Shown in pieces: positions 3,264-57,560 of a DNA stretch of 64,000 nt. Position 1 is the stretch's first letter; every line of letters starts with the position of its first letter. Source of the stretch: Pavona decussata (Eukaryota). The stretch lies in NCBI GenBank assembly GCA_977016875.1, contig CDRNST010000060.1:1240001-1304000 (forward strand). Direction: 5' to 3'. Under the pieces are notes generated by a model. The model was not told where the DNA came from and did not search any database. It worked only from the letters and a program-made list of their open reading frames with translations. The translations under genes and the position numbers were made by a program.

Positions 3264-3926
3264 TCAGTTTATGTACGAAGCATATGCCTCTTCAACGTTC
3301 GAATGATCTTCGTCGCTTTCGTAGCCAAAACTATCATTGTTTATAGTTCTTGATGCATTTCCTTTATTCATCAATTCGTCAGTGTGTTCTAAAGGTGTAG
3401 GGTTCGACGGTCTGTCCAAAAGAAGCTCGTCCGCCGAAAAGCTGTGATAGTCCTCGATGCTTTTTACTCGCGCGAGCGGTTCAGTGCTACTGCTTCGAAT
3501 CTGAGTATTCCTGCCGTATGACGCGCGAGGCCTCTCGCGCTCTCGCGGCCGCGCTATTTTTGGCGTGCTGTAAATTTCGGGAACTTTGGGTCTTCGCAGC
3601 ACCGCGGGTTCTTCAGTTGCTCTAAATTCTTTGCCTTTCAAAAGGGTTGGCCTGCTGAGTACAATGTTCTCGTCTGACTTTGGCCTTCGTTGAGTCCGCT
3701 GTGATTCCGCGAAAGTGCTACCGTCCAATGCAGCATGATCTTGCAATTTTCCGCTCAAAGGTGGCAGTCTCTTGCGCTTGTCGCTGGTGATATTTAGCAC
3801 AGGATTCGCTGGATTTTTAAGCAGCCGTTCCTGCTCTACAATTAACCGCAAAACTGCCGTCGATTCTTCATCGTTGAACTTACTCCGCGGCGGAAATCTT
3901 CGGCAGTTCTCAGCTGTGTTTTCCAT
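3264..3926 (-). CDS. Orphan gene A: uninterrupted ORF, ~220 aa, basic Arg/Pro/Ser-rich, probably disordered; paralogue of gene B
   Basis: GC-rich open frame in AT-rich surroundings, first ATG at 3926 with an in-frame stop shortly upstream. N-terminal PPRSKFNDEESTAVLRLIVEQER...LPPL and C-terminal DELLLDRPSNP match gene B. Possible 5'UTR splice acceptor (ttcgacAG) at about 3989. Confidence 0.75.
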   Translation of the reverse strand: MENTAENCRRFPPRSKFNDEESTAVLRLIVEQERLLKNPANPVLNITSDKRKRLPPLSGKLQDHAALDGSTFAESQRTQRRPKSDENIVLSRPTLLKGKEFRATEEPAVLRRPKVPEIYSTPKIARPRERERPRASYGRNTQIRSSSTEPLARVKSIEDYHSFSADELLLDRPSNPTPLEHTDELMNKGNASRTINNDSFGYESDEDHSNVEEAYASYIN

Positions 3927-4826
3927 ACTTCCCGCTGAATCCTCTAACACTCATCCCTTTCGTACTTTTTGTCTTTGTTCCTCAGTGCCTGTCGAAGACA
4001 AATGATTTGCTTTCATCAGAGTAAAAAATATATTAGCAACATAAAGCTTATGACAGGAGTGCTGGCTCGCCGGAAGCCTGAATTTGGAGACAAAACACTT
4101 CCTCACCCGAATTTAAGTTTTGGTTAAGGGCGCACGATTCAGTTCATGTAAGTCCTTTCTTCGCTTGTTCTAAACCTTAAGCGCTTCAACTCTCTCTGTT
4201 CGTTAATGTATCACCTAGCCGTGTTCATAAAATTAAGGCAATTAAAATCGTCGGATTCGACCTGTCAAACAAATGAAGTCTTGGCATAAAATATTTGTAA
4301 TTTAAACACGCGGAGAGTTCATGTTTTAGAGTGAGCGAGATTGATTATATACCCTTGATAACTTTTAGCCCTACGTCACTACTTTTTCCGCATTTTTTTT
4401 GCCCGCGTTGCCACGAAAGTCGAAGTTTCTATAAACCTGCGCATCCTAAGTTACGAAACGACTTTTGTGTAGCGAGATGCAATTATTTTTCCATTTGCGA
4501 CGCTTCCTTATTCTCGTTAATTGTGTGTAAAACTCACCATTCACAGCAACATGCTATCGCATTACGACCTGCTCGATTTACACAAGACCTTCTCGATGCG
4601 AGTCTTAGCGCGTTTTCTCTCGCGCTAGCGTGGCAAGCCTTCCAAGGGCAAATATTTCTTTGGTATAATGAACTGGCTTCAATGGGGAGCTTTAATTGTT
4701 AGGATTTATTCCCTACTCGTTCGGCTTTGTGACGCGGTTCATAGATAGTAGCTCCCCTACGATGTTGTCAAAAACAATCGCTCAAACAGGTGCACGTGGA
4801 CTTCGACACTTATTTTTTTTTTGCTT

Positions 4827-53866: not shown

Positions 53867-56294
53867 CAAAGGAAATCATGCACCCTGAAGTGTTTGGATA
53901 TCTGATGAAAAACTCCTCTTCTTTGCATCCTAAATTTAGTACCCTTCAAAATAAGTTTGTTTGAGAATGCATGCATTTTTCAAAGATGATAAAGCTTCAA
54001 TTTAAAAAAATATCCCAAACATTACTTTGTATTCTTCGGCTTTTTAGAATAATTGTTGCTTAATTGTCTCGAAAAGGTTACATGGTTACCCCCCCCCCCC
54101 CATTTTTTTTAAGGGGGGGGGGGGGGATTCCAATAGCCCTTGCTAAGATCTGCTATTCTCGCACAGTCATAAACCGCGCAAAAATACTTCGGTATTAGTA
54201 TGCACCGTCCGTAAGAGCCTGCGTTATCACGCTTAACGTGGGGGGTACACATGAATTTGGATGGAATTTACAGAGGTTTAAGGAAGGGATAGAAGAAAGA
54301 AAATGATTTTTGGAACACTAACAGACAGTTGATACCCACGCAAGAGCACCCCAGGTTGCTAGTGGTCTAACTTGGTATCCGTCTCTTAATTATTAACTAC
54401 AAATTCTAATTTTAAGACTTCACTAAATCTTCAATATTTCTTATTTCTCTCAATTTTACCAATCCTTCTAGAAAAACTATCTCCTCCCAAATATACCTAA
54501 AAATCACCCAAAAATTTACAAAACACCTCAAAACATTGATTTTTGAAATGAGCATAGGGTTTCTGTATTGCTTGAAACGCGAACGAGATATTTCGTTTAA
54601 GCCGATTTTAAGCGGCGTGAAAACGGCTTTCTTGTAGACCCCTGCCGTAAACGTCGTTCCACTCAAAAAGGTCAACGCGGGCTCTGAATCACGTGTGAAG
54701 CCCATACGACGTCTGCGCATGAGTTCGCGTCCAGTAAAATTGAAGTGTCGGATCAGAATCGAACCGACAGGCTAATCAGGCTCTAGGCGATTTACCTCTC
54801 AAAGCAAAATGTTCTGTAGTTCTAGTCCTCTTTAGCTCAGTGGTAGAACATCCAAACTAGTAATCGGCGGAAGGTCATAGGTTCGAATTCTGTTGTGAGA
54901 ATTCGGATTTCCTTTTTCCGAGTATGCTGTAGATTATTCCACGTCAGGTCTGACCATTCAAAAAGAAACTACTGGGTTGTAATAGTGTGCTACTTCATGA
55001 GTACGCATGCGCAGTAACGAAATTAGTTTTGAGAGCTTAACCTTGCTCTGTTTTAACAAACAAATGACCAAAAATTAACGGTTGTTGTGCTTGCTAATGC
55101 TAAACTAAACCAAAATATCGAAGACTAAATTACCTTACATTTCTAGGCAAACTATCAAATAAGCTTGTTTAAAACTGCTATATAATTGTACAGGAGTCAA
55201 TTGAGTGTCAAACCAAAACGATTTTAATCACTTTGGCAACTCACTGCAAACGCAAACAAAAAAATAAACCTCTCAACACTTCAGTAAATAAACGTTAGCT
55301 GGTTTTGTTCTACTTCTAATTGGGTTGATGTAGCGCGAATGTCTTTTTTAACCAATTACAAGGCGTAGAAAAGCAGAACTAAATCAATCGTCGATTAGTT
55401 TGCAGGGCAACTTCAAGTGAAAACGACTTCGCATATCTAGAAGAACTAAATTCGGCTCTTTATGCGCATGAGATAGTTGACTGAGACACAGTCGATGCAC
55501 AAATGAAGTAGAAGATTTCTTTTATCGTGTCAGCTAGCAGTTGAAACACAATATAGAACCATCACAATAACATGTCAAATGATTAACATAAAATCACTTT
55601 GTCATAAGATTCGAAGCACCTCTATTCAAATTAGTTTACTATCATTGTTTATTGTTGTGTGTGTGTGTTTTTACTGTTGTCTGAATTTTATTTGGACCTT
55701 AAGAGAGAGGTAAACTATTTAGCTTGTTATCAGCTACTTTACCTAGTAAACCTGCAGATTGCTCAATCACATAAGAAACTGCAATTAATATCATTGTGCT
55801 CACTGTTTTTGCAGTCATGCGTTTTTTGGTCCCCAAAGACTTTCACTAATTGCTTACCATAACTCTATTCATAAGATAGGAACAAAGCTTTAAAATCTAA
55901 TTAATTTCGAGTGCAGGAAAGTATGTGATCTCTTGTAACCAATTAGGTTTACAAATAAAATAATTGTATATGGCAACCTTTGCGGAAGGGATTTAATATT
56001 GCGCTAGAAATTGTGATATATCGTCGATTATTGACTCGCGGAACTTCACTGGCAACATGCTTTTACGGGATGACTCGTGTGACCACGTTCGACGAAAACT
56101 GCTCAGTGAGTGGGAAACTCTTTTGAAAAAGTTATAACACAGTAAACAAAGCAAGAGAGAAAGTTGAAGCATTTCTGCAAACAAGAACAAAGCCGCAGCA
56201 AATTATTTTGCAGTAAGTGTATACAACTAATGGGAAGGTTAGAAGAAAATTGAGAAACAAGACAGAAACCCAGCGAAAAGAGGGAGAGACAAAC

Positions 56295-57560
56295 ATGCAC
56301 AAGAAAATTCTACACAGAAGCACAGACTCCGTTCGAATTGCCCGGGCAGCGCAAATACGCCTGGATGAAATCAGTGATAAAATCGAGCGAGACAAACACA
56401 GAAGCATGAAGTCTAATTATCACGAGAAAATCAAATTATGGAACGAACTTAAATCGATCCATCGAGTGTTTGAGCCGCTGTATGTGCTCAAGGAGGATGA
56501 AAAGAGACTAGCTAATAATCAGACCGTGGCCAAAGTTGGTACGGTGCAAAGTGAAGGAAATCGTGCGTGTAATATCAACGTTGATAGGAAGGCAAGCACA
56601 TCTGCTAATCAGCCAAGATTGCTAAGAAGAGCGGAAACTCAATCCACGAACTTACAGGCTAGAAGGGGAAGGAGACACACAGAACCAAAAATTACCGAAG
56701 AAAGGTTGCTTTTGGTCGACAGTTCAAAGGGTCAAGCTCAATTAGACAAGTCATCGTTCTTGCGACCAAGGTCGCAGAGCTGGTGCGCACCCGAGAGAGC
56801 ATCGAGCAGTGAGTCGAGCCGAGTACCCTCTGCATCGAGTGAGCGAGAACACTTAGCTAAACTTCGCTCAGCCGCCGAAGGGCCTCGCATTTCCGACTCT
56901 ATGTCGTCAGTAACTATGGGATATTTAGCTTTTAAGCGAGTTCTGAAGATCAAAGAGCAGTCCGACAGTATGGAACGGAAAGTCGTAGATTCTAGATTCA
57001 GGACGAGATCTATGGACGAAGCTGAACTTAGTGCGAACTCACGGCTTCTGATGCCTGAGCAGCCAGACTTGGCGGAGGAAAAACTTGAGGTTTTACAGGG
57101 AACGTTTTCACATCAAGCAAACCCTCATCTGGTTAGAAAAGGTAAAAAGAAGCCTAATTTCAAAAAGCTTCGCCCAGCACCTCCTGGGAAACGGCAACTT
57201 AGTTCATCTCTCTCGTGGCCTCTAGGCGAGCTGCCGTTGAGATCGCCAGAATTTCGTGGAAGGAACTTTATAAACCCCGATCTTTTGCGTGCAAAAAGCG
57301 TTGAAGAACCATTGAGGTCGAAAAAGTCAGAGATTAAAACTGAAACTACTCCAACGCTAAAAGCGATTGCTTCTCACACAAGAGAGCTCCCCAGTGAAAG
57401 CGACGAAGACGAAGAAAAGTTCGGAACATTTGAAGAAATCCCAACGATTAAAATGAAATTTAGGAACAACCAACACACTAGATATAGAGAAGCATCTAAA
57501 CTTCTTCATCCTCTGGGAACAGGGTGCTTCAGCGAAAGCTTTCAAGCTGCAAGCCAGTGA
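56295..57560 (+). CDS. Orphan gene F: uninterrupted ORF, ~421 aa; paralogue of E, transcribed divergently
   Basis: First ATG (aaacATG) aligns with the MHK of gene E. Shared blocks RLDEIS.KIER.KH.SM...YHEK, IHRVFEPLYV..ED, LRPRS.SW, AKLRSAAE.P..SDSMSSVTMGYLAFKRVL, DSRF...S.DE.ELS, LSWP, P.GTGCFS.SFQA..Q. AATAAA follows the stop. Confidence 0.92.
   Translation: MHKKILHRSTDSVRIARAAQIRLDEISDKIERDKHRSMKSNYHEKIKLWNELKSIHRVFEPLYVLKEDEKRLANNQTVAKVGTVQSEGNRACNINVDRKASTSANQPRLLRRAETQSTNLQARRGRRHTEPKITEERLLLVDSSKGQAQLDKSSFLRPRSQSWCAPERASSSESSRVPSASSEREHLAKLRSAAEGPRISDSMSSVTMGYLAFKRVLKIKEQSDSMERKVVDSRFRTRSMDEAELSANSRLLMPEQPDLAEEKLEVLQGTFSHQANPHLVRKGKKKPNFKKLRPAPPGKRQLSSSLSWPLGELPLRSPEFRGRNFINPDLLRAKSVEEPLRSKKSEIKTETTPTLKAIASHTRELPSESDEDEEKFGTFEEIPTIKMKFRNNQHTRYREASKLLHPLGTGCFSESFQAASQ

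What the first reader, a model, noticed from the sequence alone, without database searches (positions are those of the whole stretch)
3264..57560. Cluster of six single-ORF, motif-laden disordered orphan proteins: candidate undescribed phospho-signalling gene cluster
Seen: six uninterrupted ORFs (A 3264-3926, B 19340-19864, C 33997-34599, D 46407-46988, E 51702-52892, F 56295-57560) lie within 54 kb, and I found no other conventional gene between them. All are basic and Ser/Arg/Pro-rich, lack a recognisable globular domain, and have a short N-terminal helix-like segment followed by a low-complexity tail. A basic-LPx[IL] motif recurs: A KRLPPL, B PLPAI and TLPPL, C KSLPSI, D RLPAL and KLPQI, E KLPRL. 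Basophilic RxxS/T sites are also dense. Inference: an old tandemly expanded and diverged family, or a co-regulated cluster of short-linear-motif adaptors, that standard annotation would leave as unrelated hypothetical proteins.
Basis: partly seen in the sequence, partly recalled or inferred. Interest (0 to 1): 0.75.

Follow-up and report, generated by a model that had tools for sequence, protein, structure and literature searches.

The report
Coral cluster of LPx[IL]-motif disordered proteins
The six open reading frames are real, conserved stony-coral genes for mostly floppy proteins, and they belong to a larger 110-kb block of at least 13 such genes that share a tiny conserved Leu-Pro-x-Ile/Leu peptide, probably a docking site for a partner that is still unknown.

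Summary
All six ORFs lie at the stated coordinates. They are intact in many corals and under purifying selection (dN/dS 0.16-0.44, every upper confidence limit below 1). None has a Pfam, PDB or Atlas relative. AlphaFold models of A and E show one or a few helices and disorder elsewhere.

They are not one demonstrable family.
- E/F are clear paralogues.
- A/B are probable remote paralogues.
- C/D share only a C-terminal W-K-x-K-x-H-R-R motif.

The cluster extends beyond the window, to about 110 kb. It holds seven or eight more intact single ORFs with no Pfam match. These extend E/F (with H, Ga, Gb and probably I) and C/D (with K and L).

- It is invariant or nearly so in the A, B, C and D orthologues.

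Gene order is kept across coral genera. The A-I-J part is also kept in a sea anemone.

"Phospho-signalling" is untested. Conserved basophilic sites exist in C, D and E/F but not in A/B.

This scan has already reported similar intronless disordered-protein clusters elsewhere in this genome.

The parts
3264..3926 (-). Gene A, 220 aa, complete CDS in one exon. Single-copy family found in stony corals and sea anemones.
   Evidence: ORF. 39 homologue clusters, including Desmophyllum pertusum and Actinia tenebrosa LOC116299638. The NCBI model in Actinia is a single-exon CDS. dN/dS 0.27. Single copy in the 602-Mb genome.
3816..3872 (-). A: conserved amphipathic helix (aa 19-37, NDEESTAVLRLIVEQERLL)
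   Evidence: Invariant columns in A1. It is the only confident helix in the AF2 model. It aligns to B's N-terminus in hhalign.
3756..3767 (-). A: LPPL motif (aa 54-57)
   Evidence: Kept in 19/19 orthologues, in the top 2% of 4-residue windows by conservation.
19340..19864 (+). Gene B, 174 aa. Head-to-head with A across 15.4 kb. Probable remote paralogue of A.
   Evidence: Exact protein is on record. 7 representative clusters at 37-75% identity, full length. dN/dS 0.16. hhalign A-B score 34.7, P 1.7e-4, against a reversed-control maximum of 19.2. The genome-wide cross-search was negative.
19472..19483 (+). B: LPAI motif (aa 45-48)
   Evidence: Kept in 8/8.
19769..19780 (+). B: LPPL motif (aa 144-147)
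   Evidence: Kept in 8/8 as LPP[LI].
33997..34599 (-). Gene C, 200 aa
   Evidence: 30 homologue clusters. dN/dS 0.33. Single copy.
34330..34341 (-). C: LPSI motif (aa 87-90), preceded by the conserved sequence R-C-K-S
   Evidence: LPSI kept in 17/18. RCKS kept in 17/18.
34015..34038 (-). C: C-terminal WKVTIHRR motif
   Evidence: Conserved in A3. The regex derived from C and D hits only C, D and K in six frames of 224 kb.
46407..46970 (-). Gene D, 187 aa from the conserved start Met7 (193 aa from the first ATG at 46988)
   Evidence: Orthologues in four other corals begin at MTH.... 74% identity where E has 51%. dN/dS 0.27 and 0.09-0.19.
46818..46829 (-). D: LPAL motif (aa 54-57)
   Evidence: LPx L kept in 5/5.
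46728..46739 (-). D: LPQI motif (aa 84-87)
   Evidence: Kept in 5/5.
46500..46523 (-). D: WKKKLHRR motif, followed by the conserved RRQS site
46989..47619 (-). Conserved non-coding region upstream of D (promoter or 5' UTR)
   Evidence: About 70% nucleotide identity to three distant coral genera, with indels that are not multiples of three.
51702..52892 (-). Gene E, 396 aa
   Evidence: 47 homologue clusters in the E/F family. dN/dS 0.44. Single-exon NCBI model in Porites evermanni.
52683..52868 (-). E: N-terminal helical domain shared with F, H, Ga, Gb and probably I
   Evidence: AF2 helix 4-61. Alignment A8. A profile built from H+G+I without E/F finds E and F as the only extra genome hits, E 0.006-0.008.
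52578..52589 (-). E: LPRL, inside the conserved sequence P-R-L-L-R-R-A-x-S
   Evidence: The P-R-L core is 96% conserved. The Leu before Pro is kept in only 6 of 23 sequences.
56295..57560 (+). Gene F, 421 aa. Divergent paralogue of E, 3.4 kb away.
   Evidence: 42% identity, E 4e-92. dN/dS 0.40. The divergent E/F pair is conserved in L008, L009, L010 and L013.
60921..63214 (-). Exons of a fibrinogen/EGF-type gene. This ordinary multi-exon gene interrupts the cluster to the right of F.
   Evidence: Pfam Fibrinogen_C at E 5e-40 and 4.5e-20, and EGF at 7e-6.

Best explanation
Shown:
- The six ORFs are real protein-coding genes, each with its whole coding sequence in one exon.
- They are the central part of a conserved block of about 110 kb on contig C60 (about 1,232,500-1,342,000). 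The block holds at least 13 such genes.
- The proteins are mostly disordered. Each has a helical segment and a few short conserved peptides.

Shown in part: the block is not one family. It contains at least three old paralogue groups made by local duplication.
- {A, B} share an N-terminal amphipathic helix, then LPP[LI], then [DE]RPSxP.
- {E, F, H, Ga, Gb, probably I} share a helical domain of about 60 residues. E/F and G also share a P-[KR]-[IL]-[LM]-x-R-x-x-S site.
- {C, D, K, L} share a C-terminal W-K-x-K-x-H-[KR]-[KR] peptide, often followed by a basophilic Ser.

Inferred: nearly all members carry one to four copies of LPx[IL]. I read this as a short linear docking motif through which the whole set binds one common partner. 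In that reading the proteins act as interchangeable adaptors or regulators. In C, D, E/F, G and K the conserved R-x-x-S sites next to the motifs would allow control by basophilic kinases.

Unknown: the partner, the cell type and the process.
For: The genes are real:
- Intact orthologous ORFs with the same starts and stops occur in dozens of protein clusters.
- dN/dS is 0.16-0.44 for A-F, with bootstrap upper limits below 1. It is 0.12-0.38 for I, J, Ga, H and K.
- NCBI models are single-exon for A in Actinia and for E, G and H in Porites evermanni.

Disorder:
- No Pfam hit and no informative PDB match: none for nine queries, two weak non-significant hits (E about 0.25) for the D profile.
- AF2 mean pLDDT is 48 for E and 55 for A, with only helices confident.

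Linkage:
- A, C, E, D and F keep the same order and strand on a 3.04-Mb contig of a related coral.
- A and E lie 48 kb apart on the same strand in a distant coral.
- D-E-F-G-H-K are in order in Porites evermanni.
- A-I-J microsynteny is kept in Actinia tenebrosa.

Paralogue groups:
- E/F: E 4e-92.
- hhalign scores, against a reversed-control maximum of 19.2: G-I 42.1, EF-H 38.5, A-B 34.7, K-L 28.5.
- The H+G+I profile finds only E and F as extra hits in 602 Mb.
- The combined domain profile hits only the six cluster genes.
- The regex derived from C and D hits only C, D and K in 224 kb.

The motif:
- It is invariant in orthologues.
- In eight unseen flank ORFs it occurs 11 times against 0.80 expected, Poisson P 1e-9. 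In 5,747 aa of ORFs outside the cluster it occurs once.
- It is kept in the Porites and Actinia orthologues of G, I and K.
Against:
- No partner has been identified. A 4-residue motif could recur by convergence, or for a reason other than docking.
- J, H and F lack LPx[IL].
- A and B do not find each other in genome-wide profile searches. I is not recovered when it is left out of the profile.
- The helical-domain similarity could owe something to coiled-coil composition, although reversed controls argue against that.
- A and B have no conserved basophilic phosphosite, so kinase control cannot be general.
- M154 has no orthologue evidence.
Confidence: 0.6

Rival explanations
1. All the genes descend from one ancestral gene by tandem duplication. 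They have diverged until only LPx[IL] and the general layout (a helix followed by a tail) remain.
For: - The genes are co-located, share a layout and share a motif.
- The best local hhalign hits between otherwise unrelated groups are always the short motifs: RLPxL for D-A, SLPSI/PLPAI for B-C, RPERPSP/RPSCP for D-B.
- A, B and D all carry [DE]RPSxP-like peptides.
Against: Profile-profile scores between the three groups are no better than reversed-sequence controls. The N-terminal helices of A/B, C, D and E/F do not align with each other.
Confidence: 0.2
2. The genes are unrelated lineage-restricted genes held together only by a shared regulatory or chromatin domain, for example a germline- or cilia-specific one. 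In this view LPx[IL] arose independently in each, or has no common function.
For: - Synteny is kept over long times even between non-homologous members (A-I-J from coral to anemone).
- Forkhead-type GTAAACA sites number 13 against 3.2 expected in the 14 upstream regions. They number 20 against 10.3 in orthologous upstream regions.
- Earlier scan notes report several other intronless disordered-protein clusters in this genome. One was linked to the sperm-tail protein SPMIP6.
Against: - Three paralogue groups are supported, so duplication did build much of the block.
- The excess of LPx[IL] (P 1e-9 on unseen genes) and its invariance are hard to explain without a shared function.
- No RFX X-box was found.
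- PDB searches found no relative among solved structures.
Confidence: 0.15
3. The ORFs are chance frames, pseudogenes, or large exons of bigger multi-exon genes.
For: - Gene calls in the metagenome-style records are ORF calls only.
- One Porites evermanni model merges part of D into a longer spliced model, and another puts a small intron in F.
- There is no RNA evidence.
Against: - dN/dS is well below 1 for every gene.
- Start and stop positions are conserved across genera.
- The flanking non-coding DNA does not align at the same evolutionary distances.
- NCBI models for A, E, G and H are single-exon.
Confidence: 0.03

Closest known systems
ANKRA2/RFXANK ankyrin-repeat ligand motif PxLPx[I/L] (HDAC4/5/9, RFX5/7, megalin)
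   Same: - It has an L-P-x-[IL] core inside disordered regions.
- In HDAC4 the motif reads PSLPxI. Phosphorylating its Ser weakens ANKRA2 binding and creates a 14-3-3 site (PMC12066720).
- Gene C has the conserved sequence R-C-K-S-L-P-S-I, which is a basophilic Ser directly before LPxI.
   Different: The first Pro is present in only 1 of 18 motif copies in this genome (Gb, PQLPSI). Binding to any ankyrin-repeat protein is untested. This is a resemblance, not membership.
Other clusters of intronless disordered-protein genes already reported by this scan in the same genome (s1-482203 CRYLR tail; s1-501997 FPEFF/WxxxF; s1-493714; s1-488980)
   Same: They are the same kind of object: conserved tandem blocks of small, single-exon, mostly disordered coral or hexacoral proteins defined only by short motifs.
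   Different: The motifs and families differ. Here the marks are LPx[IL], a W-K-x-K-x-H-R-R tail and a 60-residue helical domain that is confined to this one locus.
   Same: An N-terminal coiled-coil-like helix is followed by a long disordered tail.
   Different: The CC190 model has no match anywhere in the genome at E up to 10. None of 23 E/F family members hit it at E up to 10.
AKAP-type amphipathic helices (PKA RII docking), from my own knowledge of the loose published consensus
   Same: The conserved helices of A (STAVLRLIVEQE) and B (EAEALLKLLRQE) are short amphipathic helices with paired hydrophobic positions every 3-4 residues.
   Different: The consensus is very permissive and I checked it only by eye. 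No binding or docking model was run. I treat it as a lead only.

Membership tests
ANKRA2/RFXANK PxLPx[I/L] ligands | Pro two residues before the Leu (the first anchor residue) | tested here: not met
   Present in only 1 of 18 LPx[IL] copies in the 14 cluster ORFs (Gb PQLPSI).
ANKRA2/RFXANK PxLPx[I/L] ligands | L-P-x-[IL] core in a disordered region, conserved in orthologues | tested here: met
ANKRA2/RFXANK PxLPx[I/L] ligands | Physical binding to the ankyrin-repeat groove | not testable with these tools
   Needs a pull-down, ITC or a complex model.
CCDC190 / Pfam CC190 (PF15768) | Match to the family HMM | tested here: not met
   No match in the genome at E up to 10. None in 23 E/F members or in G, H, I.
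   Only E/F, EF-H-G(-I), A-B and C-D-K-L are linked. Scores between these groups are at or below the reversed controls.
E/F-H-G helical-domain family (defined here) | A profile built without a subfamily recovers that subfamily genome-wide | tested here: met
   The H+G+I profile finds E and F (E 0.006-0.008) and nothing else in 602 Mb. It is not met for I.
14-3-3 mode-I clients (R-S-x-pS-x-P) | Arg at -3 or -4 and Pro at +2 around a conserved Ser | tested here: inconclusive
   E/F R-P-R-S-x-S-W-S has the Arg residues but no Pro at +2. C R-C-K-S-L-P fits RxxSxP. Phosphorylation is untested.
Sperm/cilia microtubule inner proteins (lead from s1-501554) | Sequence relative among solved axonemal proteins | tested here: not met
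   PDB profile and phmmer searches for A, B, C, E/F, G, I and J returned nothing; the D profile gave only two weak hits (E about 0.25) to unrelated chains (a PPR protein and a designed knot protein). Sequence searches could miss such short proteins.

The most novel reading that the evidence does not exclude
LPx[IL] is an undescribed docking motif for one conserved cnidarian partner. That partner could be an ankyrin-repeat 'tumbler-lock' protein of the ANKRA2 type, with a phospho-switch to 14-3-3 at sites such as R-C-K-S-L-P-S-I in C. In this reading the 110-kb block is a co-regulated, possibly forkhead-driven, battery of competing adaptors for that partner, kept together since before stony corals and sea anemones split.
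Probability: 0.15. Interest if true: 0.8.

Novelty: new variant of a known kind. Interest (0 to 1): 0.55.

Why it matters
Short linear motifs are usually found one protein at a time. Here a whole conserved gene block appears to be defined by one 4-residue motif, which gives a ready-made set of natural variants for finding the partner. The families are unnamed and have no Pfam model, yet they have been kept for hundreds of millions of years in reef-building corals, and A, I and J are also kept in anemones. With the other clusters this scan has reported in the same genome, the block suggests that hexacorals hold a sizeable, unannotated set of intronless disordered regulators. Annotation pipelines would leave them as unrelated hypothetical proteins.

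Tried and rejected
Searches that found nothing:
- Pfam on all six ORFs, on 23 E/F relatives and on nine flank ORFs: nothing above noise.
- CC190/CCDC190: no match.
- PDB sequence and profile searches for ten queries: nothing meaningful.
- ESM Atlas for A and E: no usable hit. 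For E the only hits were compositional look-alikes among plant MAPKKK fragments.
- A paper search for LPxI/LPxL was swamped by bacterial lpx genes.

Leads that turned out to be chance or negative:
- A weak genome hit of the D profile on contig C37 is an astacin-type metalloprotease. It is a chance match.
- The 95-aa ORF just upstream of D (47008-47295) is not coding. Orthologous sequence has indels that are not multiples of three.
- RFX X-box and full CRE sites are absent from the 14 upstream regions.
- A-to-B and B-to-A genome-wide profile searches were negative.

Motif matches checked by eye against consensus patterns I know, and dropped as inconsistent:
- EB1 SxIP
- PP1 RVxF
- Calcineurin PxIxIT and LxVP
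- PP2A-B56 LxxIxE
- Cyclin RxL
- MAPK D-motif

Limits of the data:
- Actinia: no B-F homologue lies within 10 kb of A, but a 3.5-kb N gap and the flank limit make this uninformative.
- The Logan contigs L002 and L003 are colinear with the genome, so they do not show whether they come from RNA or DNA.

Full report
**Observation**

The window is eukaryotic, with 36-43% GC and no N runs. Earlier notes of this scan and the named homologues place it in a stony coral. The six ORFs lie exactly where stated and have no internal stops. None has a Pfam domain.

The description is right in outline, with four corrections.
- A and B are not basic (net charge +1). C-F are (+13 to +24).
- F has no LPx[IL].
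- D's conserved start is Met7 (window 46970). A close relative has a stop codon in the six codons before it, and all other orthologues begin at MTH....
- Conserved [RK]xx[ST] sites exist only in C (3), D (1) and E/F (5).

**Are they genes?**

Yes. The evidence has four parts.
- Word-based searches found 47 (E/F), 39 (A) and 30 (C) clusters of full-length relatives. The exhaustive search found 7 representative clusters for B.
- D orthologues were taken from the DNA next to E orthologues.
- Named hits are Porites evermanni (E/F), Desmophyllum pertusum (A) and the anemone Actinia tenebrosa (A). All are uncharacterised.
- Starts and stops coincide across genera.

Nei-Gojobori dN/dS against a related coral:

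| Gene | dN/dS |
|---|---|
| A | 0.27 |
| B | 0.16 |
| C | 0.33 |
| D | 0.27 |
| E | 0.44 |
| F | 0.40 |

Every bootstrap upper limit is below 1. At distances where coding DNA still aligns, the flanking DNA mostly does not.

NCBI models give single-exon coding sequences for A in Actinia and for E, G and H in Porites evermanni. AlphaFold2 on family alignments gives A one helix (19-37). It gives E a long N-terminal helix (4-61) and two weak helices. The rest of both is below pLDDT 50.

**Other genes between them?**

I scanned the 150 longest other ORFs in the window (65 aa or more) against Pfam. Only a Fibrinogen_C/EGF gene on the minus strand at 60.9-63.2 kb was hit. It lies to the right of F. 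Short-exon genes cannot be excluded.

**Are the six one family?**

No.
- E and F are clear paralogues: 42% identity, E 4e-92.
- A and B share an N-terminal helix, an LPP[LI]/LPAI motif and a [DE]RPSxP peptide, in the same order. hhalign gives P 1.7e-4 and probability 49%. That is far above the reversed-sequence controls, whose maximum score was 19.2. However, their N-terminal profiles do not find each other in a whole-genome search.
- All other pairs among A, B, C, D and E/F score at control level.

**The cluster is larger than the window**

I read 80 kb of the same contig on each side of the window. The flanks hold eight more intact single ORFs of 150 aa or more with no Pfam match.

Left of A:
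- I (474 aa, C60 1,236,488-1,237,912, plus strand)
- J (559 aa, 1,232,515-1,234,194, minus strand)

Right of the fibrinogen gene:
- Ga (250 aa, 1,310,605-1,311,357, minus)
- H (453 aa, 1,314,763-1,316,124, plus)
- K (237 aa, 1,317,767-1,318,480, plus)
- L (288 aa, 1,320,127-1,320,993, plus)
- Gb (250 aa, 1,334,703-1,335,455, minus)
- M (154 aa, 1,341,519-1,341,983, plus; no orthologue evidence)

A FAST-kinase-like ORF at 1,226,078-1,227,844 marks the left edge.

Orthologues of I, J, Ga, H and K in other corals are intact, with dN/dS of 0.12-0.38.

**Paralogue groups**

An all-against-all hhalign run with reversed-sequence controls gave these scores:

| Pair | Score |
|---|---|
| G-I | 42.1 |
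| EF-H | 38.5 |
| A-B | 34.7 |
| K-L | 28.5 |
| EF-I | 23.3 |
| D-K | 21.7 |
| C-K | 21.1 |
| EF-G | 20.4 |
| C-L | 20.2 |

*The helical-domain group.*
- The hits among E/F, H, G and I all fall on the same N-terminal helical segment, which aligns without gaps.
- A profile of that segment finds only E, F, Ga, Gb, H and I in the 602-Mb genome.
- A profile built from H+G+I alone finds E and F (E 0.006-0.008) as the only further hits.
- The same test does not recover I.
- E/F and H also share a later G-Y-x-A-F-K-[KR]-x-L peptide.
- E/F and G also share a later P-[KR]-[IL]-[LM]-x-R-x-x-S peptide.

*The C-terminal motif group.* C, D, K and L share a C-terminal W-K-x-K-x-H-[KR]-[KR] peptide. A pattern derived from C and D alone matches only C, D and K in all six frames of 224 kb, against about 0 expected.

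**The LPx[IL] motif**

Conservation in orthologues:
- A: 19/19
- B: 8/8 at both sites
- C: 17/18
- D: 5/5 at both sites

In the E/F family only 6 of 23 sequences, all E-type, keep the Leu, while the P-R-L core is 96% conserved.

Two enrichment tests were run.
- Within the six genes the motif occurs 7 times against 0.96 expected from shuffles. This count is post hoc.
They carry 11 copies against 0.80 expected (Poisson P 1e-9). Twelve ORFs outside the cluster, totalling 5,747 aa, carry one.

Several copies are kept in Porites. The C-terminal F-L-P-x-L of I is kept in Actinia. J, H and F have none.

**Synteny**

- In a related coral, A, C and E lie at 539, 573 and 595 kb of one contig on the same strand, with D and F beside E.
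- In a distant coral, A and E are 48 kb apart on one strand, as in the window, with D downstream of E. There, G rather than F lies upstream of E.
- Porites evermanni keeps D-E-F-G-H-K-(L) in order.
- The divergent E/F pair recurs in four species.
- In Actinia tenebrosa the A orthologue is followed by orthologues of I and J in the same relative orientation.
- F looks dispensable. It carries an early stop in one species and is missing beside E in another.

**Known families**

- No PDB relative was found by sequence for ten queries.
- The Atlas gave no usable hit.
- The closest described motif is the PxLPx[I/L] ligand of the ANKRA2/RFXANK ankyrin repeats. In HDAC4 that motif contains a Ser whose phosphorylation switches binding to 14-3-3 (PMC12066720). 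Gene C's conserved R-C-K-S-L-P-S-I resembles this, but the first Pro is present in only 1 of 18 copies here. I therefore treat it as a working analogy, not membership.

**Regulation**

- Forkhead-type GTAAACA sites number 13 against 3.2 expected in the 14 upstream regions of 800 nt. They number 20 against 10.3 in 27 orthologous upstream regions, and some keep their position. A, B, E and L have none.
- A 630-nt non-coding region upstream of D is as conserved as the coding sequence.
- These observations are hints of shared control, not proof.

**Verdict**

The single-family reading is not. The reading as a cluster of short-motif adaptors is the best available, and an independent test of the motif strengthens it. 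The partner, the expression pattern and any role in phosphorylation signalling are all untested.

Earlier notes show that this scan has already reported several other intronless disordered-protein clusters on other DNA of this genome. The kind of object is therefore recurrent. This locus is a new and unusually large example with its own motifs.

Noticed in passing
window 46989-47619 (- strand): The non-coding region upstream of D is about 70% identical to three distant coral genera, as conserved as the coding sequence. It holds a near-invariant 55-nt block containing a 7-bp inverted repeat (AATTCTG...CAGAATT). The 95-aa ORF inside the region is not conserved as coding.
   Followed up: partly
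Upstream regions of the 14 cluster genes, e.g. window about 47619-47640 (D at -649), 34750-34760 (C at -158), 56140-56150 (F at -153): Forkhead-type GTAAACA sites are about 4-fold enriched (13 against 3.2 expected). They are about 2-fold enriched upstream of orthologues in other corals and Actinia, and some are positionally conserved. This is a possible shared regulator.
   Followed up: partly
window 60921-63214 (- strand), continuing to about 64.8 kb in the genome: A multi-exon Fibrinogen_C/EGF (and PAN-like) gene interrupts the disordered-protein block. Its exons are not seen between F and G in the Porites evermanni locus L010.
   Followed up: partly
G000:C60 1,232,515-1,237,912 and L015:13696-19280: Two further single-exon disordered-protein genes (I, 474 aa; J, 559 aa) lie next to A. 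They keep their order and orientation next to the A orthologue in the sea anemone Actinia tenebrosa. J carries the conserved sequences LTDPxLKxSLQxII+RR.S and a C-terminal KLL+IK.CM..LA..A.
   Followed up: partly
L013:4755-6011 (related coral) and L004: F appears to be decaying or lost in some corals. In one species an early stop removes the conserved GTGCFSxSFQA tail and the RPRS site is altered. In another species there is no F beside E, and a G orthologue (itself frameshifted) sits there instead.
   Followed up: partly
window 1187-1756; about 31970-32392; 63789-63997: There is a 106-bp tandem repeat (5.4 copies) with related copies near 32 kb and in the orthologous loci of other corals. There is also a 70-bp tandem repeat at the right edge of the window.
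   Followed up: no
window 24885-24955 (-) and 50210-50287 (+): Two weak tRNA-like matches (Rfam 33 and 29.5 bits). ARAGORN finds only the second, with an odd anticodon loop. They are probably SINE or pseudo-tRNA relics.
   Followed up: partly
window 7783-8080 and 24111-24383; 32805-32984 and 36198-36418: Dispersed repeat copies that also occur in the orthologous regions of other corals. They are probably transposable-element fragments.
   Followed up: no
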